Of a stretch of DNA of 64,000 bases, positions 10,263 through 64,000 are shown in pieces (positions within the stretch are counted from its first letter, which is position 1; every line of letters begins with the position of its first letter). The DNA is from Macrostomum lignano (Eukaryota), in contig NIVC01000040.1 in assembly GCA_002269645.1 (NCBI GenBank), positions 1,054,001-1,118,000 on the forward strand, read 5' to 3'. Below the pieces are notes generated by a model. It was given only the letters and a program-made list of their open reading frames with translations. It did not search any database and was not told the DNA's origin. Made by a program: the position numbers and the translations under genes.

Positions 10263-10263
10263 C

Positions 10264-10284
10264 TGGTGGTCAGCTAAGTGGGAT
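10264..10284 (+). promoter_or_regulatory. Putative primer-binding site (tRNA-Leu-like)
   Basis: TGGTGGTCAGCTAAGTGGGAT begins 1 nt after the 5' LTR. TGG complements the tRNA CCA end and the rest resembles the Leu-type PBS TGGTGTCAGAAGTGGGAT with extra bases. Confidence 0.6.
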
Positions 10285-10333
10285 AACGAGACGCCGAAAC
10301 CCTTTCAACGAGTCGTTCAAACGCTACATTACT

Positions 10334-14700: not shown

Positions 14701-16251
14701 CACAATACGAGACCAGTCACACGTGAGGAGCTCCAGACCCATCAGCGTGCTGACTCCGCCATCGCGATGATGATCAACCTAATTGAAAGTCGACAACCGA
14801 AGCCGCCGCTGAATCAGCGATTAAATCTGACAAGAGATGAGAGAAATCTACTAGCGTTCTATGAGCAACTGGAAGTCCGAGACGACGGACTATTAGTCAT
14901 TCATCTCAACGATGATGGCGAGGAGGATAATGCGAGGATCGTCCTGCCGAAGAGTCTCGACGCAGCCGTGTTTGCCGACCTGCATGGTTCACCCTACTGC
15001 GGACACATGGGCCGAGATCTCACCATCGCGAAAGTGCGCGAAAGATTCTGGCGACCGGCCCTGGCCAAGGCCGTGTCCGACTATGTCGCTTCCTGCCAGA
15101 CCTGCACTCAGAGCAAAGGACGGCGACGCATCCCAGCGCATGTACAATCGTTTCCGGTCTGCGAAATCTATGGGCGATGCGCAATCGACATCATGGGCCC
15201 CACTGGAGACCCGACAGACCGAGGCAATAAGTACATCCTGACCTACGTCGACACTACGTCGAAATATCCATTCGCCTTCGCCATGAAGAATCAGCGGGCC
15301 AAGACGATCATAACTCTGCTGCAGGAACAAGTCTTCCCGATCACCGGAATCCCCGCGTGGATCCATTCGGACCAAGGCAAACAGTTCACAGGGCACGAGT
15401 TTCGACATTTCTGCGAAGTCTATGGCATCCGGCAGACAACGACGCCGCCATACTCGCCCTGGGCCAACGGTCAAGCTGAATCGTGCAACAAAAACATCAA
15501 AAAGGTGCTCACTTGCCTCCTTGAAGATCATCAACAGTGGGACAAGATGCTGCCAGCCGCTCTGACAGCTCTGAGATCAGCCGTCAATCGTACGACGGGA
15601 TTCTCGCCGCATTACGTCATCTACGGAGTGCCCTACCGGTATCCGATCGATAACACCCTAGACCGCCTGGACGTATCGCCGGACCTCCCCGAGTACATCG
15701 CAAAGCATCAGCGTAGACTGGCCGAGACCGAAAGGATTGTGCGACAGCGCTTGCGAGCTGAGATCCAACGCCGCGAAGAGTACTACGAGAACCGACCCAA
15801 GCCCGTGGAACTGCAGCCCGGAGACCTGGTTTGCCTGGCCAACCCGAAGCTCGAGTTGGGCGAGCTGCCGAAGTTTCACCGGCCGTACAAAAGCATGTAC
15901 AAGGTCAACAGAAAGGTCGGCGAAGTAGCCTACTGGATCCAGCCTGCAATAGCCCGACGTGGACGTCCAGCAGAAATACTCGTGCATCGCAATAACATCA
16001 TCAAGGTGCCGCAGATGATGGCAGATCGACCGCAGGAGCCGCCGCACCAAACTGAGCGGCCAATGCTGCCCTTCGAGTCGAGTGACGAAAGCGAAGTCGA
16101 CCCAGCCGATCAGCCCGCTCCAGAACAGCCAGCCGCAGCTCAGCCTGACCTGCGCGGCAGCCAATTGTTCGAGCCGAGCCTCCGCCATCCGGAAGTGCTG
16201 CCTGAAGGCGACCCGGATCTGCCTGACATCGGCATGGAGCTCGAGATCTAA
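11665..16251 (+). CDS. pol: Pol polyprotein (protease, RT, RNase H, integrase), -1 frame relative to gag
   Basis: Protease LLDTGS; RT FDLNSGYYQI, MPMGLSSAP, YLDD; RNase H DTDAS..TKQELLAVV..TDH; integrase HGSPYCGH..CQTC, IDIMGP, SDQGKQF, NGQAES. No internal stops. Confidence 0.97.
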   Translation, partial: GKRDGWTRHRGQRHPAAAPALKSPPRTLVAQQATAETASAAPVQNSAPKRPRRDPFLTGEIQGRYFAFLLDTGSKCEVLGFSTWHRLCTDDPTLRGQIEPCLQRIVTYNGEPIQMAGQLTIKVKIGNFEPTVKFLLAKGSHDNILGFEFLEKYSTSLDLAAGMLFFKDGTAAPLRYTRTEATTCRIYTAESTTVPPLSSARIKIKLAKGREENQGTPAVIEPLKPARREEDVQHLDAAPALISMANGEGAIEMINRGTTSIKVRANALVGIARPIRLPELQFFPLLKPEDSVNQIQNEDPDAWIKEIDISEDLSSDQRAQVIELLKKYKTIFSQGPHDLGRTHLVTHSIVLKDTNPVHLPTRRIPPHLLPKVDQLLDDLLAKGVIRPSFSSYNTPLVIIPKKDGSLRIVQDFRSLNQKCEYFPYPIPNIQEAFASLEGSQLFSTFDLNSGYYQIPLRPEDQDLTAFATLHRGQFAYNVMPMGLSSAPASFMRLMNAVLNGIAYKSAIAYLDDVIVYSKKFNDHLQQMEEVFKRVQEANLKFKGKKCHLFRASLNYLGHVVTKDGIKTDPAKIEAIQTWPRPRTARQLKSFVCTCAYYAKFVPGYAELAAPLHDLIKEKKIRNFNCLWGKAQQDAFDQLKAAMTSTSVLAYPQFSEDPEVMFILDTDASATRIGACLSQRQADGVERPIGYFSRRLKPAEARYPITKQELLAVVDGMRHFRFYLLAKKFICRTDHAALTWILRRTQQEGIFGRWLQRLSEFEFEIQHRKSSQHQNADGLSRRPEDDAECLEEAQREAAVEDQSKQPAAITGAAAPKVHDSSHPSPPPSKKRPTRRHRRKPPTKSTESNGETTPPATPTADSKPLTELHPPATKSRPSASRYRDSQRSPTSFSSTTCCPSRSRRLLAEGDEDSDHSAASNDSCQSVRRPVFKKVRFSLDTDSSADSPSSADESNSDKSDAEMSDEDRPSNSASTRQPARVAIVRRELQTPNHAATAEAAPTNSTNRRQTLNLTDHNTRPVTREELQTHQRADSAIAMMINLIESRQPKPPLNQRLNLTRDERNLLAFYEQLEVRDDGLLVIHLNDDGEEDNARIVLPKSLDAAVFADLHGSPYCGHMGRDLTIAKVRERFWRPALAKAVSDYVASCQTCTQSKGRRRIPAHVQSFPVCEIYGRCAIDIMGPTGDPTDRGNKYILTYVDTTSKYPFAFAMKNQRAKTIITLLQEQVFPITGIPAWIHSDQGKQFTGHEFRHFCEVYGIRQTTTPPYSPWANGQAESCNKNIKKVLTCLLEDHQQWDKMLPAALTALRSAVNRTTGFSPHYVIYGVPYRYPIDNTLDRLDVSPDLPEYIAKHQRRLAETERIVRQRLRAEIQRREEYYENRPKPVELQPGDLVCLANPKLELGELPKFHRPYKSMYKVNRKVGEVAYWIQPAIARRGRPAEILVHRNNIIKVPQMMADRPQEPPHQTERPMLPFESSDESEVDPADQPAPEQPAAAQPDLRGSQLFEPSLRHPEVLPEGDPDLPDIGMELEI

Positions 16252-25559: not shown

Positions 25560-26963
25560 CTACATCACTTTGTCGAGTTCGAATCTTTCAGCAGCCTCCT
25601 GTCCAATCATGCCGGGCTCAATGAGCGCCGTAACTGCGGTGCGCGCGCTGTTGTCGAAAACGGCGCTATTATAGTCGACGTTGACTTCTTGGTCGGCTGC
25701 GTCGCGCCTGACGACGCACTCGAAGTTGTTGTCAGTTTCAACTCTGCGTCCGACGGCGACGCCGCTTCTGCTGAAAGTTCCGCTGCCTGCGGCTTCGTTC
25801 CGAGCCCGACGACGGCGGCAGAAGCAGAGTCCGCTTGCCAGCGAGCGCAGGGCGACGGCCAGCGATTTGCGGAACGAGGCGGACACCAGGCAGTAGAAGA
25901 TGAAGTTGATAGCGCAGCCAGTTACCTGGCTTAGCGTTGTCAGACTGGTCAGTCTCTGCAGTATATAATATGTTCGAATCGCTGCGAATTCGGAGCTCTT
26001 GAGGCGGATGAGCAAAGTGTTGCTAATGTATCTCCTGCACAGCAGGTTGAGTATCTGGCCTGGACTGATTAGCACAAGGAACAGCAAGGTGACGGTCACC
26101 AATAACGGTGTCAGATTATCTGTCTGCTGTACAGCTCCGGCACCGTTGCCTTGCAAACGCGTTGTAGCATCTTCTTGATTGCCATTCTGGGCGTTCAGCT
26201 GGTTGCGCTGTCGCAGACTGGACCTGTAGGCCAGGATTAGGCGGATGTTGCAGACTACGATGCCGAGTAGAGGCAACGCGTTTACTAGCAAAATAGTGGC
26301 CCAGTAGTAAATATAAGCGTGCCATTTCATGCCAGGGTCCAGCTCTTTCCTCCGGTTGAAAGTGTAGCACGAGTTACTGTTGATCGAGTTGTCTATTGTC
26401 GCTTCGTATTTAAAGAAATCAGGGAAATGCAACACAACAGCGGCGACAAAAACGATGCCAATTGAGACGCGCAGTTTTTTCCGGTTGAGCCAGTTGCGCG
26501 ACTGCAGCGGCCGCCAGACAGCCAGATAGCGGCAAACCGTAATTGTTAAAGTGAGCCACACGCTAGACGCCATGAAAATGTTGGCGAAAGCCTGGCCAAG
26601 AATCTGCGAATAAAGCAGACTCAAAGATGAGCATTGCGGTCTGGTCTTGCTGATCGGCAGCGAGCTCAAACAGATGCACAAATCCGACACGGCTAGGGCC
26701 ATCAGCGACTGCGACATGGAGCTCTCCAGCCTTGCTGGTCGGCCTCCTAAACCATCTCCGCTAGCTACGCCGCCGCGCTGTTGTCGCTTGCAGGGCTTAG
26801 CGAAGGCTAAAACTGTGAGCAAGTTGCCAGCGATGCCCAGCAGGCAGACGGACCGGAGACCGATGCCCAGACAGACTGATTCGAAATCACGGAAATTCCG
26901 TATGGCGGCGGCCACTTGTTTGACAAAATCGCTGCTGTCATTCTTGCCGCCTGACTCGAGCAT
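25560..26963 (-). CDS. Intronless rhodopsin-class (class A) GPCR, FMRFamide/peptide-receptor-like, ~467 aa
   Basis: Seven hydrophobic helices with class A motifs: GIAGNLL (TM1), LAVSDL (TM2), TVCRYLAV (DRY variant), LLFLVLISPGQ (TM6), AINFIFYCLVSASFR (TM7/H8). Start set at MLESGG; the upstream extension in the ORF track is AT-rich and probably non-coding. Confidence 0.9.
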   Translation of the reverse strand: MLESGGKNDSSDFVKQVAAAIRNFRDFESVCLGIGLRSVCLLGIAGNLLTVLAFAKPCKRQQRGGVASGDGLGGRPARLESSMSQSLMALAVSDLCICLSSLPISKTRPQCSSLSLLYSQILGQAFANIFMASSVWLTLTITVCRYLAVWRPLQSRNWLNRKKLRVSIGIVFVAAVVLHFPDFFKYEATIDNSINSNSCYTFNRRKELDPGMKWHAYIYYWATILLVNALPLLGIVVCNIRLILAYRSSLRQRNQLNAQNGNQEDATTRLQGNGAGAVQQTDNLTPLLVTVTLLFLVLISPGQILNLLCRRYISNTLLIRLKSSEFAAIRTYYILQRLTSLTTLSQVTGCAINFIFYCLVSASFRKSLAVALRSLASGLCFCRRRRARNEAAGSGTFSRSGVAVGRRVETDNNFECVVRRDAADQEVNVDYNSAVFDNSARTAVTALIEPGMIGQEAAERFELDKVM

Positions 26964-28143
26964 TGCGATTTTGGAGTAAAATCTGTGAATTGGTGAGTTG
27001 GTATGGAGCTTGAGCATCTGGATTGATTTGTTTTTCAAGTTCAAATAGATGATTGTGTGGTGATTCCTAATCAAAATGATTTTAAACTTTTTTTCGCCGA
27101 TTAAATTGATGAATCGAATATTGGACATTGGATTCTGGATACTCGTACGCAGGCACAGTGGACTCATTTTTTGATTTTCACGCATTGTCAAGGACTCTTG
27201 TCAAATCGAAACCGCGCGGATTTGGACGCGTTAATTAATCGTTGAACTGATGTTTGTCCAAAAATAGGAGCAAGCGCCTGGCATGTAGTTGTCCAAAGTC
27301 AATGCCAAACCAAGGCGCACTGAAAGCTGTCTTGAAAACTTTTAATCAAAAGGAAAGCGGATTAGCTACAGACCGGGAACTGGGACTGCAGCTGTACGTA
27401 GGAAGTCCTATTGATTAGTAGAATAAACCTTAAATAGTCGACGCTAGTTTATCTAGTTCAAAGCGGCGAAAACCGATCTAAAATGGTACAATCTTGGCTG
27501 TACAATTCCGTTTTCAGTAAGCCAACATCAAAGTATTTTAAGTAAGAGATGCATCGGAATCGCCCAATAGTTATGCAGGATTATGAACCAACTGTGCGGT
27601 AAACGCAGTCACAAGTTAGTTTCGAGCGTAGTTTAAATACGAGTTTGAATCGTAAGACGTCTATGCAAAAGTGTGACTTTAATATTGAATATTGAATTAT
27701 TTTATTTAATAACTTCATTTAACAATAAGGCTAGCGCAGACTCGTGACAAGGTTAAAAAACTACCGCAGATTTTTGCTGTAGAACTTAATTAACTGTAAT
27801 GACTTACCAGCGTGCCTATAAGCAGGGAATGTGTTGTTTCGAAAGTTGGCGGTAATTAAAAATTTTTGCTCCTGCTTTTCCACGACTGTATTAACTTTAA
27901 CTTTATCCATTCAGCTTTACATGTTAGCAAAAACATATAGCTTATCTAGTGCTCAGTTATTGGCTGTGCAGGAATTCTTGTTGGCTGATCTGTCAATCCA
28001 ACCAATCGCACATCGAACTAGGAGTTGTCGCCTTGTTTGATTTTGCTGAAGCATTGAATCCATCTTTTCTAAGCATGTTCTATGAGAGTTCAGTTTGACA
28101 GTCTTATCAAATCAACGTCAGCCAACTTTTAAAAAATTATTTA

Positions 28144-30808: not shown

Positions 30809-47532
<16,724 letters not shown>

Positions 47533-48392: not shown

Positions 48393-49144
48393 GCGTGTGT
48401 TGTAAATAGCATCAGTTTCGCTCTCGCGTGCGCGTGAACTTATGTGTTTTATGCTCAGTGTGCAATCGCTAGTGTACATGCAAAATCAAATATAAAATAT
48501 CTCGCTTGGCTTTAGCCACTTCGTGTTTTCTCGGACTAGCTCAAGCCTGCCTTTTGCCTAGTTTACAGTGGTTAACAATGATTTGAAATGTTTGTGTGTT
48601 TTACAATGACCTCGAATGTTTGTGTTTCACAATGACTTCAAATGTTTGTGTGTTTCACAATAATCATAGATGTGTGTGTTTCACAATGACCGCTATAGTG
48701 TGTTTCCCACCAGTGACGGCCGCTTGTGTCCTTTTAACTACCAGAACACTATGGTTGCATATTTTTGTTATTGAAATTGATTTGAAATTTCTTTTAGCTG
48801 TTAGAGATAAACCACACACAGTCTTGATAACGACCTCAATCAAGGGAGAGAGAGAGTGTGGAGAGCTTAAGATTGTCTGAGTCTGAGATAAGGGACACCC
48901 GAGCTCTGTGGCCTGATCCAAGTGCTGTCACCTTTGAACCAATTGACTCAACAGAATGATTGAGCAGCCTTTTAGCGACTAGAAAACTATCTATATTAAC
49001 CCGAGCCTTGCACTGGTTCTGCTCAGATTTCAACTCACCTGAGGTTGGCTGTTGTCTATTCTCAGAAATATTTTTTCAATCTGTTTATTAATTGATTGTA
49101 TCGATCTTGCCTTCAGCTTGACATCCAACAAGACTCGTTTGAGA

Positions 49145-52100
49145 ATGCCGCCGATCAAATTGGCCATAGTAACGCTTTTGTTGCTGCTGCCGAGTCTTGT
49201 TGTCACCTCGCCAACAGAGAAGGCAACTAAAAAACAGCCGAACATCCTCATATTGCTGGTGGACGACTTGGGCTTCGGCGACATCGGTGAGTCCTTCTTT
49301 TTTGTAGAAATGTTTTTAAGGCCGTCCTAAAAGAAAAAATAATTAATTTAATTAATTTTCATTTCTCAATTCTTGAATGCTTTAAATTTATTCTAAGATA
49401 GTTTAACGTCTTGCCAGTGGCATGTCAGGCCGGCGCACTTAAAGCGACATTGTCACACAACTGGCAAGAAGCATTGCTGCCCCCATTCCGCCGACTCCCC
49501 TGAGCAGGCACACAAGCGCGCGGATACGTACGCAGTCATACGCACAGGCACACTCACACAGGAGTGTACAGCGGCCCTAACTTTATTGATCGTTAGGCAT
49601 GTACACTTCACAGTGCCTTGGGGGTTGGCCCTCAAGCTGGGCATTAATTGCACGAGCAGAGCCAAGCCGAGATCCCAATCTAGCCCAAAAATAATGCGAC
49701 TGCACTTGGAATCGAGCCTGGGCCGCTGGCACACCAGAGTGCCGCGCTGGACGACTAGGCTACGGCCGACCTTATTCGAATATTACTTTAGCTTTGTTTG
49801 CAAAACGGTTCAATGCTTTACCAAAAATTTCCTTCTAACCTCGCAGGCGCCAACGGTAACACCACAATTCGAACGCCGAATGTTGACAGAATCGCCAAGG
49901 AAGGCGTCCGGCTGTCGCACCACCTGACAGCCGCGCCAGTTTGTACGCCGAGTCGGTCGGCACTGCTGACGGGAAAATATCCCATTAGGATGGGCATGGT
50001 GCCCAGCATCCAGATGCAGGTGTTCCCGTTCACGGCTAGCCAAGCCGGTTTGCCAACTAATGAGACCACTTTTGCCAAGGTGGCTCAGCGGTCTGGCTAC
50101 CGCACCGGACTGATTGGTGAGCGATCGACCGCTTAGGGTCTTCATGCATTTTTTGTTGTAAATTTTAATTATTGGGTTTGAAGAGATTGTGCTGTGGGGA
50201 CTTGTTTTGCGTGCTGAGTGTGAGGGATTGTTTTGCGGTGGTGGGTGTGAGGGCTTGTCTTGGGGTGATGGATGTGAGGGGTTTGTCTTGGGGTGGTGGT
50301 TGTGAGGGGTTTGTCTTGGGGTGGTGGTTGTGAGGGGCTTGTCTTGGGGTGGTGGGTGTGAGGGGCTTGTCTTGGGGTGGTGGGTGTGAGGGGCTTGTCT
50401 TGGGGTGGTGGTTGTGAGGGGTTTGTCTTGGGGTGGTGGTTGTGAGGGGCTTGTCTTGGGGTGGTGGGTGTGAGGGGCTTGTCTTGGGTGGTGGGTGTGA
50501 GGGGCTTGTCTTGGGGTGGTGGGTGTGAGGGGCTTGTCTTGGGGTGGTGGGTGTGAGGGGCTTGTCTTGGGGTGGTGGGTGTGAGGGGCTTGACATGTGT
50601 CACGTAACGTACATGTATGCATTGTGTGCCCGATCCGCCACTATTGCGCAACTACACAACCAGGAAAGTGGCATTTGGGCGCCCACTGCAGCAACAGCAA
50701 AGACTTCTGCCACCATCCGAACAACCACGGCTTCGACTATTTCTACGGCTGCCTGCTGACTCTGTTGAAAGATTTCAGCGGCCTAGGCGAGTCGATCCTA
50801 CATTCGCGATTTCCTCACTACTACAGGAACATCAGCCTCACACTGCTGGCTACATTGGCTTCTCTCGGTGTGGGCTACAAAATTGGCATCCTGCCCAGAA
50901 AACTCTGCATATTCTTAGCTTTGCTGGGCGTCCTTGTTACCGGATTCCTATTCTGCCTGCCGGGTTACCTAGTCCGCACCGTGAACAGCCAGCTTCATCG
51001 GCAAACCGAGCTGGTTGAACAGCCAATTCGATTTGAGAAACTGACCCAGCGGCTGGTCTGGGAAGGCGAAGAGTTCCTTGACAAGGCGGTGGACGAGGGA
51101 AAGCCGTTTCTGCTATTCATGTCTTTCCTTCAGGTTCGGAGCTGACTAATTTTACTAGCTTTTGCCTCATTTTTCATTGGGGTAGCGGTGCTCAAGAGGT
51201 GTGAGCTATCCGATTGAGTCTGGGGTAGCGGTGCTCAGGAGGTGTGAGCTATCCGATTGAGTCTGGGGTAGCGGTGCTCAGGAGGTGTGAGCTATCCGAT
51301 TGAGTCTGGGGTAGCGTTGAATTTCAAATAGTTAATGCTTGGCCCCCGTTCTTCCAAAATGCCGCAGGTGCACTCCCCGTTGTACAATTCGGTACCCGGA
51401 TATCGGGGTCGCAGCGCCCACGGCTGGTACGGCGACAACATCGAAGAGATGGACTGGTCCGTCGGCCAGATCCTCGACGCTCTGGACAAGCGCGGCCTGT
51501 CCGACGACACCATCGTGTACTTCAGCTCGGACAATGGCGGCCACATCGAGGAGACGACGCACACGGGCGAGCGGGCCGGCGGCCACAACGGCATCTATCG
51601 GGGCAGCAAATGTCAGGGCGCCGTTGACGGCGGCATCCGCGTGCCTGGACTGCTGCGCTGGCCTGGCGTCATCCCGGCTGGCAGTCAGAGCAACGCGCTG
51701 ACCTCCCAGATGGACATCTTCCCGACTCTGCTGGAGGCCATGGGCCAGCCGGTACCGTCGGGCATCGACGGTCGCAGCATCACAAAGCTCCTGCGCCAGC
51801 CTCAATCAACAAAATCGCCTCACGACTTTCTGTTTCAATACTGCGGCACCTTGCTGCACGCGGTGCGTTGGAACTCGCCCGAGGGGGTGCTCAAGCTGCG
51901 GCACTACTCCCCCAACTGGCTGCCCGGCACTGAGGGCTGCCGCTACATCTGCGGCTGCATGGAAGGCCTCGGCAGCGTTCGACACTCGGTGCCGCTGCTG
52001 TACGACCTCAGCACCGACGAGCGCGAGACCGCCATCGTCCCCGCCGACTCGGAGCGCTACCGCCGTCTGGTGCCGCAAATTCTCGAAGCCGAGAGGCGTC

Positions 52101-52234
52101 ATCAGGCGAGCCTGAGCTCAGTGCCGAGCCAGTTCACCTTCGCCAAGCTCATGTGGCGGCCCTGGCTGCAGGACTGCTGCAATTTCCCCCTCTGCAACTG
52201 TCGGGACACCAAGTACGACAGTAGGCCAGCCTAG
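49145..52234 (+). CDS. Steroid-sulfatase/arylsulfatase (STS/ARSD-H-like) gene, 4 exons, 582 aa
   Basis: Exons 49145-49286, 49847-50116, 50664-51133 and 51368-52234 join in phase (1749 nt). Signal peptide, PNILILLVDDLGFGD, formylglycine motif CTPSR, GKWHLG, GFDYFYG, a two-helix hydrophobic insert, SSDNGG, DIFPT. Confidence 0.93.
50240..50592. repeat. G-rich 27-bp intronic minisatellite (GGTGGGTGTGAGGGGCTTGTCTTGGGG)
   Basis: Direct reading, in sulfatase intron 2. Confidence 0.95.
51178..51317. repeat. 43-bp tandem repeat, ~3.3 copies
   Basis: GGGGTAGCGGTGCTCAGGAGGTGTGAGCTATCCGATTGAGTCT, in sulfatase intron 3. Confidence 0.9.
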
Positions 52235-54705
52235 GGGAGTCTTTGTTCTCGGCCTTCCAAATACTGATAAAGACATGAACATCTAAAGTACTTCCATTTA
52301 TGTAGTTAATGTCTGTTTCTATTAATTTTTCTCCGTGATATAGATTTCTGCGACGACCACGATGAGATTCTCTGAATAGAGATTCTTATGGTTGAGATTC
52401 TCAAAGGTGAGATTCTTGATCTTGAAAGTGCGAGCATGGAAAGGTTTGTGGAGTTATTTATCGTCTATGGTCGAAATTATGAGCTTTACGTCAACCAAAT
52501 AAATAATGCAGACACGCAATAAATACATTCCGCCTTCAGGCAGCAGTGCGCACTTTCAGTTGGATTTAAAATATGGAGAGTAGGGCGGCAGCTGCGCGAC
52601 TCGTTGGTTAGGCTATACTGTTACAAACACTAGAACTCAAAATTTAACTATAGCGTTCCTATATATGAGCTATGTTGATATATATATTGAGCTTGACCTG
52701 GAATGAAAAATAAATTGAATATATATACTGAATTAAAATTCTCTCAGTCGATATTTTCGATTCTGAGTTTCTTATAAAATTGTTTTTGACGGGCATTCCG
52801 TTGCAATTACATATTCCTGAAGTCTATATACTAATTTTGCGCTTTAACAATGAAATAAATAATATATGAAAAAATGAATGTAAGTACTACAAATAGAAGT
52901 TAACAGAGGGTCCTTTGAAACTTCACAATAGCCATCCGGGGCGCTCATGGTTTGTCCACCTCATCTCATATATCCACTCACCTTCTATCCGCTTCCATCT
53001 TGTCTCATCTATCCTCTTAGTTATCCAACTGAATCAGAAATTCTTTGTTGCGCATCGATTTTACGCATTAATGTGTTTAAGACGCGTTTTGCATACATTT
53101 AGCACGTGTATTAGAAGTGCTTTAACAGAGACCTTGAACTAATAATACAAGCAACAGATTCACCTGCTGTAAAACAGCTCACCGTCTCACCTGCCCTCTA
53201 CAGCTACAGCAAAAATAATTCGGTCATAAATAATTGGATAAGAACGCCTGGCACATCCTCTTCTCTCTTGACTGTCAGCCTTCCTCTTTGCCCTGCTGCG
53301 CCAAAGAGAACCGCCGTCTCTCTCTCTGTCCCTACATGTGTATCTGGTCGGCTTAGTCTCTGGTTCGTTTATATCTCTCTCTGTTAGTTCGCTTCTCCGC
53401 AAATGAGGAAAATATATTCTCCAAGCAGTGTTGTTTAGTTCGGCAGTTGACCCACTTGGGCCGGAACTGTGACGACTCTGTCTGTCAGGGGAGCAAATTT
53501 GTGCTCGACAAAGGAAATTAGGTGGGGAGTTGCAATAATAAAAAAATGCGCATATATAATTAGAGATGAGATAGGCATTGGATTATAGCTATGGTGTACT
53601 TTTGTAAGTGTCAAAGACTAGCTGCTCTTGTTGATCAGACTGATAATAATAGCTAATTTCTAATTCCCAGTGTTTAGGGATTAGGCTGAGTTAGCCATCC
53701 ATTTCATTCATTGATTGATCCCTTAGGGAGAGTAGCAATCCATTCTATTCCTTCCCTGATGATAGTAGCAACTGCAGAATCGGTGAGAAAACATGCACAG
53801 CAATCTGCGTACATTTTGCTTCAATTTCATTTTCATTTTCTGCACGCCAATGCAAAATGCTTTCAGACAAGAAGGCATCGAAATCGCTCTAAACTCTCGC
53901 CTAAATTTCTAGCAGGATGCGGGAAGTACATCTGTGAGGCAAGGATTTTCGCATGCACAGCAATACCGCGGTTCTCCGGCCCATGATTTATTCATGCAGC
54001 TCATGCATAGCGACGGCTGGGTTGAAGAAACGAAGGACAGACAAAGGGGTAAAACGATTGAAATTCTGTCAAGCTTGAAGCAGCAAAAAAGGGAGTCTTA
54101 TAGCAGCTCCCTCTGTGGCAGCCAGGCCTGCATCTATTGCTAGCTAGCTGTGTTTTCTAATTTCACTAATGGGCCCGGTGCCTTTCTGCCCCGACATGAT
54201 TCAGCTGTCAGGAGATGCTCCAGAGCCTTTTGAAGGGTGGTGTTTGGGATTAATTTTTTGCAGCAGCAGCGTGCTGCCACACAGACACACAGAGCAGTGC
54301 AGTTGGCTTTTCATGGGGAAATTAAGTCTCCGAAATTTGGAATTTTGTGTGTGTGTGTGTGTGTGTGTTCATTGTCCAAAATCGTTTGCGTTGGTCACGT
54401 GATGCTTAATGTTAATAGCTTCTGATAATCGTTGGAGCCGTTGGAATGGCTCATGTGTCCTTTCTGCAGGCAATTCCAATCTACGCTTTAAGGACTCTGT
54501 TGCAATTTGAGCGAATCACAGGTTTTTTGGAAATAAAGTGCTTTCGTGCGAATTGAGAAGGCCACGAAATGGGGGCATTCATCAGCCTGACTGTGTAACT
54601 GGTGGCCTGATTATGTTACATTTTTGTTTTTGAAAACTGTGGCTCTGCGGTTTATGAACCCTCAGATGAAAAATGTGCTTACAGAATTTTTGTCTCTCTT
54701 CTCTG

Positions 54706-55825
<1,120 letters not shown>

Positions 55826-55937
55826 ACTGTACTGTAAATTATGAGACTGAAAAATTCGCCCACAGTAAAGAAACTTGTTTGGTTGATCTTCGACGTTAAT
55901 TATGATATTATCTAGTTTATAATTTCTAATTAGACAG

Positions 55938-56012
55938 GATCACAAGAACAGCCATGACCCAAGGCGAGCAACGATCACAAGAACAGCCATGACCCAAGGC
56001 GAGCAACGATCA
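55938..56012. repeat. 35-bp direct repeat x2
   Basis: GATCACAAGAACAGCCATGACCCAAGGCGAGCAAC occurs twice in tandem. Confidence 0.85.
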
Positions 56013-56360
56013 CTTTGATCAGCGGTGGCCATCATCGACATACCCTTAATCACCAGCTTTAATCCCAAACCATATACCGTTTAGCCATCTATGCGTTCCC
56101 TATTGGCAGTTTAGATGAGGCTATATGTATGTAATTACGCATAAAAATTTCCTTGCATTTTTAGAATTGACCTCATCCGTTTTTGACAACAACAGCAGCA
56201 GGCTTGTGTTTAGCAAATTGAATTCGCCAATATGAAATTAAGTACATTGCGTCGCCGTTAAATATAGATAGAACATTACCGTCCAACATCCGATCATATA
56301 GTCTTATAGAATAGCTGATTTTGATTCTTTCGACTTTTATTATCTAATATAATACTGAAC

Positions 56361-58091
56361 AATGGGGAGTGAAGGGAAGTCACAGTGGGGAGTGAAGGGA
56401 AGTCACAGTGGAGTGAAGGGAAGTCACAGTGGGAGTGAAGGAAAGTCACAATGAGGAGTGAAGGCAAGTCACAGTGGAGTGAAGGGAAGTCACAGTGGGA
56501 GTGAAGAGAAGTCACAATGAGGAGTGAAGGGAAGTCACAGTGGAGTGAAGGGAAGTCACAGTGGAGTGAAGGGAAGTCACAATGAGGAGTGAAGGGAAGT
56601 CACAGTGGAGTGAAGGGAAGTCACAGTGGGAGTGAAGAGAAGTCACAATGATGAGTGAAAGGAAGTCACAATGAGGAGTGAAGGCAAGTCACAATGAGGA
56701 GTGAAGGCAAGTCACAATGAGGAGTGAAGGCAAGTCACAATGAGGAGTGAAGGGAAGTCACAATGAGGAGTGAAGGGAAGTCACAGTGGAGTGAAGGGAA
56801 GTCACAGTGGAGTGAAGGGAAGTCACAATGAGGAGTGAAGGGAAGTCACAATGGAGTGAAGGGAAGTCACAGTGGAGTGAAGGGAAGTCAAAATGAGGAG
56901 TGAAGGGAAGTCACAATGAGGAGTGAAGGGAAGTCACAATGAGAAGTGAAGGGAAGTCACAATGAGGAGTGAAGGGAAGTCACAATGAGGAGTGAAGGGA
57001 AGTCACAATGAGGAGTGAAGGGAAGTCACAATGAGGAGTGAAGGGAAGTCACAATGAGGAGTGAAGGGAAGTCACAATGAGGAGTGAAGGGAAGTCACAG
57101 TGGAGTGAAGGGAAGTCACAGTGGAGTGAAGGGAAGTCACAATGAGGAGTGAAGGGAAGTCACAATGGAGTGAAGGGAAGTCACAGTGGAGTGAAGGGAA
57201 GTCAAAATGAGGAGTGAAGGGAAGTCACAATGAGGAGTGAAGGGAAGTCACAATGAGAAGTGAAGGCAAGTCACAATGAGGAGTGAAGGCAAGTCACAAT
57301 GAGGAGTGAAGGCAAGTCACAATGAGGAGTGAAGGGAAGTCACAATGAGGAGTGAAGGGAAGTCACAGTGGAGTGAAGGGAAGTCACAGTGGAGTGAAGG
57401 GAAGTCACAATGAGGAGTGAAGGGAAGTCACAATGGAGTGAAGGGAAGTCACAGTGGAGTGAAGGGAAGTCAAAATGAGGAGTGAAGGGAAGTCACAATG
57501 AGGAGTGAAGGGAAGTCACAATGAGAAGTGAAGGGAAGTCACAATGAGGAGTGAAGGGAAGTCACAATGAGGAGTGAAGGGAAGTCACAATGAGGAGTGA
57601 AGGCAAGTCACAATGAGGAGTGAAGGGAAGTCACAATGAGGAGTGAAGGGAAGTCACAATGAGGAGTGAAGGGAAGTCACAGTGGAGTGAAGGGAAGTCA
57701 CAGTGGAGTGAAGGGAAGTCACAATGAGGAGTGAAGGGAAGTCACAATGGAGTGAAGGGAAGTCACAGTGGAGTGAAGGGAAGTCAAAATGAGGAGTGAA
57801 GGGAAGTCGCAATGAGGAGTGAAGGGAAGTCACAATGAGAAGTGAAGGGAAGTCACAATGAGGAGTGAAGGGAAGTCACAATGAGGAGTGAAGGGAAGTC
57901 ACAATGAGGAGTGAAGGGAAGTCACAATGAGGAGTGAAGGGAAGTCACAATGAGGAGTGAAGGGAAGTCACAATGAGGAGTGAAGGGAAGTCACAATGAG
58001 GAGTGAAGGGAAGTCACAATGAGGAGTGAAGGGAAGTCACAATGAGGAGTGAAGGGAAGTCACAATGAGGAGTGAAGGGAAGTCACAGTGG
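56361..58091. repeat. 21-23-bp minisatellite (GAGTGAAGGGAAGTCACAATGAG), ~1.7 kb
   Basis: Direct reading. Longer blocks of variant units repeat as higher-order units. Confidence 0.97.
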
Positions 58092-58413
58092 GAATAATAT
58101 TGAAATATGAAAAAACCTTGGCGCAGTTGAGTAGCTGTCGCTCAGAAACGGAGCAGAATAACACTGAGCTCTCAGCAACCAACTGGGGAAGAGTCGTTAA
58201 CTCGGAATACTCAAAGCAGCCAATCGCAATTTCCGAAGAGTTAGAGACAAGTACGGAAACAGGAGAATGAAACTGAGCTGCCAAATTCGCAATTCGCCTT
58301 TTGCAAAAGGAAAGAGAAATAACCTAGGGAGTTAGCAAAGGATTGACACTGACAACTGGAGAATCAGAAGCTACAGTTCAGCCCAATCTTATTTTTTAAC
58401 AACGAACAGCAAC

Positions 58414-59129
58414 ATGCAGCCGCGCACCGGGGTTGTCATGGCAACCGTCGCTTTAGCCATGCTGACTGTCGCGCTGGCGCGTTTGGACAACGGCGGCGTC
58501 GATTTGGCCGACTGGCTGGAGGAGCGATCTTCGTCGCAGGGTAAAACTACTGTCAACAAGGGCTTAGAAGGGTTAGGAAAGTACAATTGCAAATAATGAA
58601 AATAGAGATCTGAGAGAGTGTCCTAGATGACAGTTGAAAAAAGAAGATTAAAATAATAAAAAAATGGTAGAAATTTGCATACAGACAGGCAGACACAAAG
58701 ACACATGAACGGGGGTGGACACAACTGACACCAAAGCATTGGATGACTTGCACACATAATGCATACTAGGGCATTGTGCACTGGACACTGAGACAAGGAA
58801 GAAAGCAATTTTTGCTTTTAAAAAAATTTCTAACGGAAGATTACCCACTGCCAGCAAACTTTGTTCCACCATTATCTCCATTATCCCCAATTGCCATCTC
58901 AACCGGAGCAGACCGACTGGGTCCGAGCGAGTCCCGCCGCGACTCGCTGGAAATGTTGTCGGCCACCAGGCGCAACGATTTGCGACTGCTCCGGCTTGCC
59001 CGACGACTGGCCAAGGAGCTGCGAGAGGCGACCGAAGCGGCGGCGACTGCTGCGGCGGGCCACGACTCGGGCCTAGCAACAGTTTTCAAGCGGTGTCGCC
59101 TCGGCCGGTTCTCCTGCCCGATTGGCTGA
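58414..59129 (+). CDS. Secreted neuropeptide-like precursor, 2 exons, C-terminal KR-CRLGRFSCPIG
   Basis: Exon 1 (58414-58540) encodes a signal peptide and ends at a phase-1 donor G|GTAAAA. Phase-1 acceptors lie at 58854 (with CTAAC upstream) or 58911, giving 133 or 114 aa. RR/KR sites, two Cys, terminal Gly then stop. Confidence 0.75.
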
Positions 59130-61379
59130 ATTGTCGATATGTCTGTCGCATCCTGCATAGCTACTAATGGCATATTAACTGTGGAGATCTTTGAGATGAA
59201 ATGAACCGAGAAAAAAACCTTACAACGCTGCAACAACCCCGATTGATGGCTCCTCATCTTGAACTCGATTTTGGTCGAAAATATACAGTTACATCAAGTC
59301 AGTCCCGATCCGCCTATACAGGCTGTTTGCGCGCGGTGTAAGGAAGGCACTCTGAATGAACTTTTTCAAATGATGTTCATAGTTTAACAATATCGCGAAA
59401 TTTGCTGTTCGGATCATAAATCAGCGTCACAGGGCGCGTTTCACAGCTTCACAGCGCAGTGGCGTAGCCATCCATGCAAAAGGGTCAAAGAGGGCCGTGC
59501 ACGGTCCTCCCTATATGCTGGCAGAATGGGGTCATCAAGCAGGCGGTCGACGGTTGGTCGCCTAACCGCGTTAAGGTTTCAGGGCGCTGATAAAGCGACG
59601 GTACAACATGCGATCTCAGAATGGTTTAAGGACGATTCTCGAGAGTTTTCTTGACAAATCGACACGTCATGAATTAGGTTCTTGTTACGATTCCCAAGAT
59701 AGTCTGTGGGTGGTTTTAAGGATGGCCCAGGGATAATGCAAAAACAGCCCGATCTTGAATTTATCCAGCATCTCGACCACCGCGTTAAACAACGTCCGAT
59801 CGACTGCGCTACGATGTCGCAGTTCGTCGTTGGAAACTTCGGTTGGTAAGCAAGTCGTCGAAGAAGACGAGGTTCCTTGATCTGCCTGTCAGCGCGCGTT
59901 GAACACGAGGACGACGCGTTAGCAAAGGAATTTGAAAACGAATGGTGAAATAGAGTTTCTTGCTATTGGCGATATGCAGATAAAGTAATGTCCTACGCCA
60001 ATTTACCAAGGTTCTTTTATAACTAAACGTGTTTCGCCCTCGGTGGAGCATCTTTAGGTTTATTTTATTTAAGATTTCAAAAGTTAATCATCAGTGTTAG
60101 CATTTTGAAAAGGCAGAGAAAGCCAAAAGAAAACTTCATTAACTTTATCTCTACAAAACAAAATTTTAACTTCTAGATTTAATCTCAGTTTGTTAAATTC
60201 GCGCTACGGTTTCTTTCAACCATCTACTGTACTGTACTTGTACATCGCTCGACAAATTTCCCGGCGAGGGAAGGCAGAAGCTGGCTTGCATTTTTCACGC
60301 TGTCTGCAATCTTTAATATGTCGGAATTGTTTTGAAACCTCCAGCAGTGCAGAGTATAAAAAAGGTAAAAGTATTGTATCATAAAAAGTGCGATGGCACG
60401 TGTACTGGAATCCTGCAGTTTAGTCCTGAAAGTCACTAAGATGTCAGAGACTGACTTGGTCTAAAAAATCACGCATGTACCTGTTGCATTAACTGTCTAT
60501 ATTATTTTGCGAAGCAGCAGGCATAATCATGGCTGCATCTGTATAGCATATCTATACCCAAAGCTTGAGAAGCAAACAATCATAGACTCAAGCAAAATCA
60601 TTTGTTGAAGCGCAAAGCAGTTTACACTCCCAACTCCATTATCGCAATATCTGTGGCAGTTCAACCAGAACGTTCGATCTGCACGAGCGGCCTGCCAACC
60701 ATGACTTTTACAGCACAGGCATATGGTATAGGCAGTATATCCGTATCCCTAGCTTTTTGTATATAGATTCATGCATTGGATTTTTTAAAGCTTGCTTTTT
60801 AAGCCTTCTAAAAGCTGTACAGTCGGATTTCAATTCTCTACTATGTACATACATGTACGCACATAGGTATATAGCTCGTAGTAAGCAAGTCACGAGACAA
60901 TAATGGATTACGTAAGCTATTTACACCTCATTAAACTACTACAGTGCTTACCATTCAGTCACTCAGCCTTAAAAGTAAATAGTTCATTCAGGTTATAGCC
61001 AGGAGTCTACATGTACGCTCATAAGCACTTGGCGCTACATTCAAAACTTGTCAAGACTTTGACGTATATTTGTAAACTTCTTAAAGACAGATATTTTACG
61101 ATTTGATGCATAGGTAGTAAGAATTTATAAGGTAAACCATAATCTCAAGCACTCTCTGAACGTACGAGTGGCTGCATGTCTGTTTACAGTATATTTGGGA
61201 AGTGAAAATCGCGGACTTTCCCGATCCCAGGATTCCACAACATTAAATGCAATTGATGACGTCAGTTAGTTTCACTATTGGACTGTATATTTGCATGGCA
61301 TGACAGGACTTTAATCTAAAAATTACAGGAAGTCACTAAAAGTCCTGTCAAAGTCTTGCGCAGCCAGTCGCCACACACA

Positions 61380-61560
61380 GCCTCAATTAGCCCAGCTAAT
61401 GTGGCACCCATTTTACAGCTGGCTGAAAATAAGACACGCAGAGTCAAGTGTCTTGCTCAAGGACACAAATTGTTCCGAGTGGGTCGAGAATCGAACCTCC
61501 GACCTTTCTGACCTCCTCCTGAATTTTAAGGTTGATGCCAAACAGAAAGCCCCACAATGC
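61380..61560 (-). mobile_element. tRNA-derived SINE relic (CORE/Meta-like)
   Basis: The minus strand has a B-box GGTTCGATTCTC (61486-61497) followed by GTGTCCTTGAGCAAGACAC (61448-61466), a motif similar to the CORE-SINE start. Boundaries approximate. Confidence 0.6.
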
Positions 61561-62559
61561 CTAGCGGATGCGATAGATAAGATATATTTAGCCATATAGC
61601 TACTGAAAATAGTTTTAGCAATTTTTTACAAACTCTTCCAATGACTGAAAGGTCTGATCCCACGTCAATTCAGACAGAAACCTGCTTCCTGTAAAGACAG
61701 CAATAATCGGTAGAGATGTATTGTTTCTGGTTAGTTTAAAACGATATGCAAATGTAAGAAAAGCTATATTAAGCTTGTATTTTCTATGGGGAGAGAAGAA
61801 GAGATCAAAGGCAGCCCTATAGCTACGAGCTAAGAATCGGCACAGACAGGCTTCTACGCGTCGAAGCTGCAAAAAGTTCCATTCGATGTAGTTTTGAGCT
61901 CAACCAGACCAAGCGTGAATAACTTGAGCTTGATAAATCCAATTGAGGAATCCTTACTTATACATGCAGTGCACCAGAGAATAGCAACTTCCTTGCGTTT
62001 TTTCGTGATTCTACTCGTATAAACAGCATGAATTTTCGAAGCTATAAAGACCCAAGTTTGTAACTCCACATACGTATAATAATCTCAAAAGCTACTTGTA
62101 GTTTCATCACTAAAATGGCTAAAAATTCTTTAAATTTCATGAAAGCTATAGACTCAATGCGAACAGGCTGAACTGCTAATGCAACGACATGGGTTCGAAT
62201 TTTAATCATGAAAAATAACTATATAAAAGCCTTTTCAACCAAGCAAAGCAGACTTGACTTGAGAAAAGGAAAAAGAAATTAGAACTCAATCAACTTTCAA
62301 TAAACCATTTCGACTTTTGAAGATCGTCCAAGCTTTTAGACACACGGCAGATTTTGTCTGCATTGCATTTTGCCTCTCCATGCTTAGTAAGTCTTATTAC
62401 GTTCTGGTGGGTGACTGTATATCAAATTCATTCTTTTATTGCGGGAGAAGTTTTCATTTCTATATACATGCAGGGGTAAAATGTACCCGGTACATACATA
62501 AGAATCGGTGAGCTATTAATACATGAATATTCCATGTCGCATTTGTCCCCTACATCTGG

Positions 62560-62790
62560 GGGGATTGCTGAGATGTCAAGGCTCATAGGGGAATTGCTGA
62601 GGTGAGATGAAAGGCTCACGGGGGAATTGGTAAGATGTCACAGAGGCTCACGGGGGAATTGGTAAGATGTCACAGAGGCTCACGGGGGAATTGGTGAATG
62701 TCGCATCTTACGGGGTAATTGCTGAGATGTCAAGGCTCATGGGGGAATTGCTGAGATGTCAATAGGCTTACGGGGAAATCGCTGAAATTC
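62560..62790. repeat. Degenerate ~31-33-bp tandem repeat (GGGGAATTG..AGATGTCA..GGCTCAC)
   Basis: About seven imperfect copies. Confidence 0.8.
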
Positions 62791-64000
62791 TGTGACCCAT
62801 GGGTTACTGAGTTGCAAAAGATTAATTGGAGGTTGTTAGTAGCCAAAGCATCAAGGGGGGAGAGGTTTAGGGTTAAGTCATGGCTTTAAAGGGAATTTAG
62901 ATTATATTTTAGGCTATACAGGTGGCTTTCAGGTCTTATGCTTTTTTGCTTTAAACATCAGTCTCCTTAGGGAACTAACAATAGTGACCATACAAGGTCA
63001 AAAGCTGCATGTGATGTGATTTATTGATTAAGATTGCTAGTCCATATTTTTAAACCACCGTCTAGATTGCAACTCACTGCAAGGTTTCCATACGAGACTA
63101 TATCAATAAATCTTGAATTTTTACACCTATGCCCTAGAGATTCCACTAAAAGCTAACAATTATTAGCTTAAAAAAGCTCTTGAATCATTAAGAGTAAACA
63201 AATTAGATTTTTAAGTAGGCAAAAGCTTAAACAAAGAGTGCATAGTCATATAGGTGTAATATAGCCGATTAAATATGATTTATGGCCAATGAAAGGCACA
63301 GAATCGCCCAATGGTAAAAACACCAAACTAGTACAAAACTGCGCCACTTAGAAGTCACAATACAAAAAAATCGAATGACAGAAAAGGAAACACTGCAGCA
63401 ATGACAAAATAAATCAAACAAGGCAGTTATTAAAATTATCAACTTAGAAATAACAGCAAGCATTATCTATGCAGTTAGTATAACTCTGAAAATTAAAAAG
63501 ACCATGCCAATCAATCTTACAACAATTTTCTTTCAACAACAGCCCTCTTGACTGTTCAGTCTCATAATCGTCCCACAGGATATGCTTCGTAATAGCTAGA
63601 CGAAGCGGAGGTAAACTGAGAGTTTAATTAACCAGTAGCTTAGATTTTCTGTATGACAACCATATCGATATTCACTATTCAGATTGGATGCAACTTACCG
63701 AAGAGGCAAAACTAATAAACATGCAATCATTGATCGATTCGAAAAGACCTGATAATCAATGAACAAAACGACACGAGGGGAAATTAATAACAATATGTTC
63801 AATTCATAAAAAAATTACAAGAATACTTTTGTGTGTGCGGGATTTTACCGAGAGGCATTTAGTTGCAAAGATTGTATTCCATAGAACACAGTTGTTGCAG
63901 TCAATTTGGTAACAACAGCCAGTCAAAATGATTGCGCTAATTTTGTGAAATTATACAGGTTGGTGCATAAGTAGCCGAACGCAATTATAAACACAAAAAT

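What the first reader, a model, noticed from the sequence alone, without database searches (positions are those of the whole stretch)
58414..59129. Candidate cyclic neuropeptide CRLGRFSCPI(G): vasopressin/oxytocin-like tail, expanded ring, no neurophysin
Seen: a signal peptide, an acidic/helical spacer with RR sites, then KR-CRLGRFSCPIG-stop. Known: VP/OT peptides are C-X4-C-P-X-G-amide followed by neurophysin; allatostatin-C/somatostatin-type peptides are C-terminal disulfide rings (AstC is C-X6-C); vertebrate MCH contains RCMLGRV. This peptide has a C-X6-C ring, a VP/OT-like CPxG tail, an MCH-like RCxLGR start and an SST/AstC-like precursor layout. Inference: a divergent flatworm VP/OT-type peptide or a new cyclic family. 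It should be compared with the reported flatworm platytocin, whose sequence I cannot confirm from memory.
Basis: partly seen in the sequence, partly recalled or inferred. Interest (0 to 1): 0.8.

Follow-up and report, generated by a model that had tools for sequence, protein, structure and literature searches.

The report
Orphan cyclic-peptide prohormone candidate, Macrostomum
This is a real, already annotated but uncharacterised two-exon gene of the flatworm Macrostomum lignano whose small secreted protein is built like a hormone precursor ending in a ring-forming peptide; it is not a vasopressin/oxytocin relative, and whether it acts as a neuropeptide is untested.

Summary
Window 58414-59129 is a two-exon gene (exon 1 58414-58540, phase-1 intron, exon 2 58912-59129). 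It encodes a 114-aa protein: signal peptide, helical spacer with three RR sites, then KR-CRLGRFSCPIG-stop. The window is Macrostomum lignano contig NIVC01000040.1. The 58911-acceptor model equals GenBank PAA92798.1 (hypothetical protein Mlig011990.g1), whose annotation is RNA-seq-derived. Three further loci encode a 94%-identical paralog with the same peptide block. The 58854 acceptor is rejected because a 7-nt insertion in the paralogs breaks its frame.

The VP/OT interpretation is not supported. Platytocin, retrieved here, is signal peptide|CFIRNCPPG-GKKR-neurophysin. The candidate has the wrong ring size and the wrong position, no neurophysin and no profile similarity. M. lignano is also reported to have four canonical VP/OT precursors. 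MCH-type criteria fail too. Only generic SS/AstC layout features are met.

No homolog exists among 1.84 billion representative proteins, and I found no expression data. dN/dS between copies is about 0.9 from 15 substitutions; the peptide block carries one change, synonymous.

Best reading: a lineage-restricted orphan prohormone candidate predicted to give c[CRLGRFSC]PI-NH2. It is plausible, unproven and of an ordinary kind.

The parts
58414..58540 (+). Exon 1 coding part (ATG to donor G|GTAAAA); codons 1-42 plus the first base of codon 43
   Evidence: Identical to the gene model of PAA92798.1.
58414..58479 (+). Signal peptide MQPRTGVVMATVALAMLTVALA, predicted cleavage after Ala22 (VALA|RL)
   Evidence: Hydropathy and the -3/-1 rule. 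UniProt names the paralog 'Secreted protein'. Cleavage site is inferred; SignalP was not run.
58541..58911 (+). Intron, phase 1, 371 nt, GT...AG, 38% GC; pyrimidine-rich tract at 58855-58905 ahead of the acceptor
   Evidence: The paralogs use the same donor and acceptor with a 370-nt intron.
58851..58854 (+).
   Evidence: In frame in this copy. In the three paralogous loci a 7-nt insertion directly after it would shift the frame. It is not the annotated junction.
58912..59129 (+). Exon 2 coding part including the stop TGA (59127-59129)
58935..58940 (+). RR51-52, possible convertase site
   Evidence: conserved in the paralog. Use of the site is inferred.
58968..59039 (+). Basic amphipathic helix RRNDLRLLRLARRLAKELREATEA (includes RR62-63 and RR73-74)
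   Evidence: muH up to 0.82; AF2 helix 49-105
59088..59093 (+). KR102-103, predicted prohormone-convertase cleavage site
   Evidence: identical in all four gene copies. Cleavage is inferred.
59094..59126 (+). Predicted mature peptide CRLGRFSCPIG: Cys104-Cys111 ring (C-x6-C), Pro-Ile tail, Gly114 as amide donor
   Evidence: Amino-acid sequence identical in all four copies, with one synonymous Cys111 change TGC/TGT. Disulfide and amidation are inferred.

Best explanation
A real, transcribed, two-exon gene of Macrostomum lignano (Mlig011990.g1 = PAA92798.1; paralogs Mlig019832.g1-g3) encodes a 114-aa preproprotein that enters the secretory pathway.

Predicted processing steps, all inferred:
1. 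The signal peptide is removed after Ala22.
2. A PC2-type convertase cuts after Lys102-Arg103.
3. The C-terminal Gly114 is used by peptidylglycine alpha-amidating enzymes.
4. Cys104 and Cys111 form a disulfide.

The product would be a cationic cyclic decapeptide, c[CRLGRFSC]PI-NH2 (monoisotopic M 1147.574), which would act as a peptide hormone or neuropeptide, most likely through a GPCR.

The precursor layout (a single ring peptide at the extreme C-terminus after a helical spacer) works like somatostatin/allatostatin-C/MCH-type precursors. By sequence, however, the gene is a lineage-restricted orphan and not a demonstrable member of any of these families or of the VP/OT family.

Shown: gene structure, annotation identity, coding constraint on the reading frame, the prohormone-like motifs, and the lack of homologs. 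Inferred: cleavage, amidation, disulfide, secretion from neurons, and signalling.
For: - Gene model and splice phase. The protein is identical to PAA92798.1 and the window is identical to NIVC01000040.1.
- The annotation is RNA-seq/transcriptome-derived (PMC5730564).
- Reading frame preserved: 0 versus 17 indel events, P about 0.004; GC3 0.76. Exon/intron GC contrast.
- Signal peptide features and the UniProt name 'Secreted protein' for the paralog.
- KR plus CRLGRFSCPIG-stop is identical in four copies. All 10.5 non-synonymous differences lie in the spacer, and the only change in the peptide block is synonymous.
- The last 9 residues are non-helical after a long helix.
- The C-terminal single-copy ring-peptide layout is the stated hallmark of SS-type and MCH-type precursors (PMC5627052; PMC4772807).
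- A C-terminal Gly as an amidation signal, plus two Cys, is the standard criterion used for orphan candidates in neuropeptidome surveys (Arn24/Arn25 in PMC4772807; PCNa/CCAa and others in PMC3890597).
Against: - No expression, localisation or peptidomic evidence was found.
- No homolog outside M. lignano: only the paralog among 1.84e9 representatives and in the 5.8e9-cluster word search; 0 hits in metagenome contigs. Conservation of the Cys pair and KR in other species is therefore untested.
- dN/dS over the whole CDS is about 0.89. The absence of non-synonymous change in the 13-codon block is not significant (P about 0.3 by my estimate).
- The bare C-terminal motif is common by chance (11 in the window's six frames).
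- The Arg/Leu amphipathic helix could itself be the functional part.
Confidence: 0.45

Rival explanations
1. A lineage-specific secreted protein that is not a signalling peptide. The functional part would be the cationic amphipathic helix (residues about 62-85), or the whole 92-aa mature protein. Possible roles are a gland or epidermal secretion, or a membrane-active, antimicrobial-like product. On this reading the C-terminal Cys pair is only a small structural loop.
For: - Strong amphipathic moment (muH 0.82) in an Arg/Leu-rich helix.
- An acidic pro-region followed by a basic region, as in many host-defence peptide precursors (general knowledge).
- dN/dS about 0.9, typical of fast-evolving secreted proteins.
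- No homologs and no neuronal evidence.
Against: - The most conserved segment among the four copies is the KR-flanked C-terminal block.
- Ending in Gly directly after a dibasic-flanked, Cys-bracketed peptide is the classic amidated-peptide signature.
- The helix region carries substitutions between copies (N64H) and three internal RR sites.
Confidence: 0.22
2. A highly divergent flatworm ortholog of the somatostatin/allatostatin-C family. It would have a C-terminal single-copy C-x6-C ring peptide acting on an SS/AstC-type (gamma-rhodopsin) receptor.
For: - Position at the precursor C-terminus after a dibasic site.
- AstC-like C-x6-C spacing and Ser before Cys2 (Manduca AstC and AstCCC sequences are from general knowledge).
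- An amidated AstC-type peptide (AstCCC) exists (PMC5627052).
- AstC is widespread in other spiralians (PMC8557429; PMC3890597), and none of the flatworm sources read here reported one.
Against: - None of the ring residues apart from S-C match.
- The Cys-fixed shuffle fraction is 0.02-0.13 before correction for 14 comparisons.
- No Pfam somatostatin hit and no detectable precursor homology.
- AstCCC amidation is thought to be arthropod-specific.
- Whether M. lignano has an SS/AstC-type receptor is unknown.
Confidence: 0.1
3. A divergent VP/OT-type peptide or an MCH-type peptide.
For: - The SCPIG tail is identical to that of octopressin (CFWTSCPIG, general knowledge); 0.001 of Cys-fixed shuffles score as high.
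- R-C-x-L-G-R-hydrophobic..P resembles the MCH sequence RCMLGRVYRP.
Against: VP/OT:
- Wrong ring size, wrong position in the precursor, no neurophysin, no GKR after the Gly.
- No profile similarity.
- M. lignano is reported to have four canonical precursors.

MCH:
- The ring is 6 residues rather than 8 or 10.
- Arg rather than Met/Ile follows Cys1, and Phe rather than a basic residue sits at -2 of Cys2.
- Cys2 is out of register in the alignment.
- The family may be unique to deuterostomes.

The two resemblances also exclude each other.
Confidence: 0.03
4. A transcribed but functionless ORF: a young or decaying gene, or an ORF in a non-coding transcript duplicated along with its genomic block.
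For: - dN/dS about 0.9.
- Exon identity (94.5-96.3%) is barely above that of the 5' flank (96.0%) and the intron (92.3%).
- No homologs anywhere.
Against: - The frame is kept free of indels while neighbouring non-coding DNA has 17 events (P about 0.004).
- GC3 periodicity, an intact signal peptide, intact splice sites and an intact stop in four copies.
Confidence: 0.1

Closest known systems
Somatostatin / allatostatin-C-type precursors (e.g. insect AstC, AstCCC; echinoderm SS-type)
   Same: - Small precursor: signal peptide, spacer, dibasic site, then one disulfide-ring peptide at the extreme C-terminus.
- AstC ring spacing C-x6-C, with Ser preceding Cys2.
- AstCCC is also amidated.
   Different: - No shared ring residues beyond S-C, and no F-N-P or F-W-K core.
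- A two-residue Pro-Ile-amide tail instead of a single Phe.
- No detectable precursor homology.
- Receptor unknown.
Melanin-concentrating hormone-type precursors (vertebrates, echinoderms, hemichordates)
   Same: - C-terminal ring peptide after a dibasic site.
- Local letter match R-C-x-L-G-R-hydrophobic.
   Different: - Ring of 6 residues, not 8 or 10.
- Lacks Met/Ile after Cys1 and the basic residue at -2 of Cys2.
- CP instead of PC.
- Amidated tail.
- A protostome source, whereas MCH is so far known only from deuterostomes.
Vasopressin/oxytocin-type peptides, including flatworm platytocin (CFIRNCPPG-NH2) and octopressin (CFWTSCPIG-NH2)
   Same: Cys-Pro-x-Gly at the C-terminal end of a disulfide-ring peptide; SCPIG is identical to the octopressin tail.
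   Different: - Ring C-x6-C, not C-x4-C.
[quoted passage not shown]
- No GKR and no neurophysin.
- The Gly is predicted to be lost on amidation.
- No profile similarity.
Orphan Cys-containing amidated candidate neuropeptides from in-silico neuropeptidome surveys (e.g. starfish Arn24/Arn25; Platynereis PCNa, CCAa, QDNa)
   Same: Identified only by signal peptide, dibasic site, Cys pair and C-terminal Gly; lineage-restricted; family assignment uncertain.
   Different: A different sequence. This one has not been listed in any flatworm neuropeptide catalogue I could search.

Membership tests
Vasopressin/oxytocin-type | Six-residue ring, Cys1-x4-Cys6 | tested here: not met
   The candidate ring is C-x6-C; platytocin is CFIRNC.
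Vasopressin/oxytocin-type | Nonapeptide lies immediately after the signal peptide and is followed by G-K/R-R | tested here: not met
   The peptide is residues 104-114 of 114 and is followed by the stop codon. Platytocin precursors read SP|CFIRNCPPG-GKKR.
Vasopressin/oxytocin-type | Neurophysin domain (PF00184, 14 Cys) in the same precursor | tested here: not met
   No Pfam hit at E<=10; only 2 Cys in the whole protein; hhalign against VP/OT profile A1 gives probability 0.14%.
Vasopressin/oxytocin-type | C-terminal Pro-x-Gly-NH2 | tested here: inconclusive
   The letters C-P-I-G are present. With no further Gly, the Gly would be the amide donor (Pro-Ile-NH2) or remain as a free acid. The chemistry was not tested.
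Vasopressin/oxytocin-type | No other VP/OT ortholog already present in the species | not tested
   PMC8896804 reports four canonical M. lignano precursors (PAA85176.1, PAA50340.1, PAA46766.1, PAA87831.1) and no clear receptor. My searches did not retrieve them.
Somatostatin/allatostatin-C-type | [quoted passage not shown] | tested here: met
   KR102-103 followed by the last 11 residues; criterion from PMC5627052.
Somatostatin/allatostatin-C-type | Two Cys with family spacing (AstC C-x6-C; SS CxxxFxxxxxxC) | tested here: inconclusive
   The AstC spacing is met; the SS spacing and the central Phe motif are not.
Somatostatin/allatostatin-C-type | Conserved ring/tail residues (AstC ...C-[YA]-F-N-[PA]-[IV]-S-C-F) | tested here: not met
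   Only S-C is shared; alignment scores are not distinctive after multiple comparisons. The AstC sequences come from general knowledge.
Somatostatin/allatostatin-C-type | Cognate gamma-rhodopsin SS/AstC-type receptor present and activated | not testable with these tools
   No taxon-restricted search of the M. lignano proteome was available, and no assay.
MCH-type | Ring of 8 (vertebrate) or 10 (invertebrate) residues between the Cys | tested here: not met
   6 residues; criterion from PMC4772807.
MCH-type | Met/Ile after Cys1 and Lys/Arg two positions before Cys2 | tested here: not met
   Arg after Cys1; Phe at -2 of Cys2.
MCH-type | Peptide at the precursor C-terminus after a dibasic site | tested here: met
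Generic secretory prohormone (neuropeptide precursor) | N-terminal signal peptide; small size; no globular domain | tested here: met
   hydropathy, A-x-A; no domain; UniProt 'Secreted protein' for the paralog. SignalP itself was not run.
Generic secretory prohormone (neuropeptide precursor) | Dibasic cleavage site and C-terminal Gly amidation signal flanking a short peptide | tested here: met
   KR and Gly-stop, by sequence only.
Generic secretory prohormone (neuropeptide precursor) | Mature peptide more conserved than the spacer across relatives | tested here: inconclusive
   0 non-synonymous and 1 synonymous change in the 13-codon block, against 10.5 non-synonymous changes in the spacer. Only one 4%-diverged paralog is available.
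Generic secretory prohormone (neuropeptide precursor) | Expression in neurons or endocrine cells; processed peptide detectable | not testable with these tools
   No hits for the gene IDs in papers or in the supplements held.

The most novel reading that the evidence does not exclude
The gene encodes a genuine new flatworm neuropeptide, c[CRLGRFSC]PI-NH2. It would be either the long-missing, highly derived platyhelminth representative of the SS/AstC (or wider SS/AstC/MCH-like) group of C-terminal ring peptides, or the founder of a macrostomid-specific cyclic peptide family with its own GPCR.
Probability: 0.12. Interest if true: 0.55.

Novelty: new member of a known kind. Interest (0 to 1): 0.3.

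Why it matters
If validated, it would add a cyclic amidated peptide to the poorly sampled neuropeptide repertoire of an early-branching, genetically tractable flatworm. It would also give a concrete ligand for deorphanising flatworm GPCRs.

As it stands it is one more unvalidated, lineage-restricted prohormone candidate of a kind that every in-silico neuropeptidome survey produces. It does not change the picture of VP/OT evolution in flatworms, because platytocin-type precursors with neurophysin already fill that role.

Tried and rejected
1. Homology searches
- Word-indexed search of 5.8e9 clusters with the full precursor and exhaustive phmmer against 1.84e9 representatives. Only the M. lignano paralog was found.
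- Pfam scan at E<=10. Only a sub-threshold DUF834 hit on the signal peptide. No neurohypophysial, neurophysin, somatostatin or pro-MCH match.
- Short-peptide search with a relaxed E-value.
- Degenerate back-translated pattern of KR-C-x-LGRF-S-CP-x-G-stop against JGI metagenome contigs: 0 hits.

2. Literature
- Peptide strings and gene/protein identifiers: 0 papers.
- Supplements of three M. lignano papers: none held, or no occurrence.
- Collins 2010 planarian peptidome, the Fasciola GPCR paper and the marine flatworm review: no comparable peptide and no AstC/SS/MCH system described for flatworms.

3. Retrieval of M. lignano's own VP/OT precursors
- Reached the polyclad platytocins but not the M. 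lignano entries. Their existence rests on PMC8896804.

4. Selection analysis
- Too few substitutions to discriminate.

5. The upstream acceptor 58854
- Rejected.

6. The GPCR gene 31 kb away as a possible cognate receptor
- No evidence. It is a divergent rhodopsin-type receptor with only weak PDB matches.

7. Structure search of the AF2 model
- Not attempted. A low-confidence all-helical hairpin would give meaningless matches.

Full report
**What is there**

- An ATG at 58414 opens a 127-nt exon that ends at a G|GTAAAA donor (58540|58541).
- Both proposed acceptors (exon start 58855 or 58912) restore the frame (phase 1).
- The frame closes at TGA 59127-59129 with ...ATVFKR-CRLGRFSCPIG.
- Exons are 65-67% GC and the intron is 38% GC.

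**Identity of the locus**

The 114-aa product made with the 58911 acceptor is identical to GenBank PAA92798.1, 'hypothetical protein BOX15_Mlig011990g1' of Macrostomum lignano. Window 48414-64000 is base-for-base identical to contig NIVC01000040.1 of assembly GCA_002269645.1.

A 94%-identical paralog (P0001 = PAA46943.1/PAA58986.1/PAA67221.1, Mlig019832.g1-g3; UniProt 'Secreted protein') is encoded at three further loci with identical CDS.

The GenBank annotation of this assembly was derived from a genome-guided RNA-seq transcriptome (StringTie/TACO/TBONE; PMC5730564). The spliced model therefore reflects transcript evidence, not an ab initio guess. The gene stands alone, between a sulfatase gene about 6 kb upstream and a sulfotransferase gene about 6 kb downstream on the other strand.

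**Which acceptor**

The window and the paralogous loci are collinear at about 90% identity over several kb, including the intron and flanks. In the paralogs a 7-nt insertion sits directly at the upstream 'ccag' site, which would put that acceptor out of frame. The 'gcag' at 58908-58911 and its pyrimidine tract are conserved, and all paralogs use it with a 370-nt intron. The 58854 alternative is therefore rejected.

**Is it coding, and is it constrained**
- Against the paralog there are 17 indel events in 1055 nt of flank and intron, and none in 345 nt of exon (expected 5.6; P about 0.004).
- GC3 is 0.76 in the predicted frame.
- Substitution data are weak. There are 15 differences, dS 0.049, dN 0.044 and dN/dS 0.89. 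Exon identity is hardly above that of the 5' flank.
- All 10.5 non-synonymous differences are in the spacer. The KR+CRLGRFSCPIG block carries one change, a synonymous TGC/TGT in Cys111. With 13 codons this is not significant.
- By itself the C-terminal motif is not unusual. A generic dibasic-C-x4-10-C-x0-6-stop pattern occurs 11 times in the six-frame translation of the window, against 4.2 +/- 1.9 in shuffles.

The case rests on the combination: transcript-based model, signal peptide, preserved frame, and motif.

**Protein anatomy**
- Residues 1-22 form a textbook signal peptide: positive n-region, h-region 5-22, VALA|RL.
- Residues 23-50 are acidic (net -4).
- Residues 51-101 are basic, with three RR pairs and a strongly amphipathic Arg/Leu helix (muH up to 0.82).
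- AlphaFold2 without an alignment gives helices 4-42 and 49-105 and a non-helical last nine residues, at modest confidence (pLDDT 67).
- KR102-103 precedes the 11-residue C-terminus.
- The predicted product is c[CRLGRFSC]PI-NH2 (M 1147.574) or the Gly-extended acid (M 1205.580). This prediction uses the usual rules of convertase cleavage after KR, a C-terminal Gly as amide donor, and oxidation of the Cys pair. Those rules are established knowledge of prohormone processing, and the planarian peptidome work relies on them (PMC2953531).

**Relatives**

None were found beyond the species.
- Exhaustive phmmer against 1.84 billion representatives found only the paralog.
- The word-indexed search of 5.8 billion clusters gave the same result.
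- Pfam gave nothing.
- A degenerate DNA pattern for the peptide block found nothing in metagenome contigs.
- The peptide string and the gene and protein identifiers occur in no searchable paper.
- The supplements I could search held no expression data.

**Vasopressin/oxytocin hypothesis**

I retrieved the real platytocin precursors (sequences). Both read signal peptide|CFIRNCPPG-GKKR followed by a neurophysin with 14 Cys. That is the canonical VP/OT architecture.

The candidate differs in every structural criterion:
- a ring of six rather than four intervening residues;
- the peptide at the C-terminal end rather than after the signal peptide;
- no GKR;
- no neurophysin.

BLASTP against platytocin gives E=2.1. 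hhalign against a 13-sequence VP/OT profile gives probability 0.14%. The platytocin paper states that M. lignano has four canonical VP/vasotocin precursors and no clear receptor (PMC8896804). The only similarity is the tail letters S-C-P-I-G, identical to octopressin. Even there the chemistry would differ, because the Gly is followed by the stop codon.

**MCH and SS/AstC hypotheses**

Semmens et al. (PMC4772807) define MCH-type peptides by four features: the Cys pair; Met/Ile after Cys1; a basic residue two positions before Cys2; and a ring of 8 residues in vertebrates or 10 in invertebrates. The candidate has Arg, Phe and a ring of 6. In the best local alignment (RCRLGRFSCP against RCMLGRVYRP) Cys2 is out of register. 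MCH may be unique to deuterostomes (PMC5627052).

For SS/AstC-type peptides, two features are met: the single C-terminal copy and the AstC-like C-x6-C spacing. The ring residues are not, apart from S-C.

The peptide resembles three incompatible families about equally well. It is also built from Arg, Leu and Gly, which are common in this GC-rich coding sequence. The resemblances are best treated as convergence. The authors of the starfish and Platynereis surveys explicitly raise this risk for similar orphan candidates.

**Verdict**

The feature is real and correctly described.
- Most likely (about 0.45): a lineage-restricted orphan prohormone giving a cyclic amidated decapeptide. It works like SS/AstC/MCH-type precursors in layout, but it is not a demonstrable member of any known family.
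- Main rival (about 0.2): a secreted protein whose amphipathic helix is the functional part.
- A functionless ORF is unlikely but not excluded (about 0.1).
- VP/OT or MCH membership is effectively refuted.

Interest is modest. The gene model is already in GenBank, the kind of candidate is ordinary, and the decisive evidence (orthologs in other Macrostomum species, neuronal expression, the peptide by mass spectrometry, a receptor) lies outside what these tools can reach.

Noticed in passing
window 25563-27200 (-): A single long open frame encodes a rhodopsin-family GPCR (PF00001 6e-20; Srw-like 1e-7). It lies about 31 kb from the peptide gene. It is very divergent: the best PDB matches have E about 1e-6 (bradykinin B1, 5-HT2B, CCK-A, galanin R2, neurotensin R1). 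It may be a flatworm-specific orphan peptide receptor. Nothing links it to the peptide gene.
   Followed up: partly
window 10073-16248 (+): An apparently intact LTR retrotransposon: a gag-like ORF (551 aa, PF03732) overlapping a 1545-aa pol ORF with aspartyl protease, reverse transcriptase, RNase H and integrase domains.
   Followed up: partly
window 40541-46411 (+): A 1957-codon open frame with no Pfam match. It runs through two 42-nt tandem-repeat arrays (41651-42754, 26 copies; 43130-43713, 14 copies). It is either a repetitive protein or a frame kept open by in-frame repeats.
   Followed up: no
window 56359-58087: A 23-nt satellite (ACAATGAGGAGTGAAGGGAAGTC, about 77 copies, with a 314-nt higher-order period) ends about 330 nt upstream of the peptide gene's ATG. 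The paralogous loci carry the same satellite in a much shorter array. The window is generally satellite-rich: (TCTG)n 54702-55835, (AACT)n 35476-36273, and a 14-mer in about 106 copies at 32732-34181.
   Followed up: partly
window 58388-58413: A T-rich tract followed by ...AACGAACAG|CAAC directly precedes the ATG. This could be a spliced-leader trans-splice acceptor, since 38.8% of M. lignano genes are reported as trans-spliced. No TATA-like box was found in the 300 nt upstream, and no canonical AATAAA/ATTAAA in the 770 nt downstream of the stop.
   Followed up: no
window 49127-52234 (+); L004 16923-20353 (-): The peptide gene is flanked by a sulfatase gene (PF00884, Sulfatase_C) and, just beyond the window end, a sulfotransferase gene (PF03567).
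   Followed up: no
L001-L003 versus window 53000-63700: The whole block around the gene exists in at least four copies in the assembly. Three are nearly identical to each other in the gene region, and this window's copy differs from them by about 10%. This fits the known duplicated, neopolyploid M. lignano DV1 genome.
   Followed up: partly
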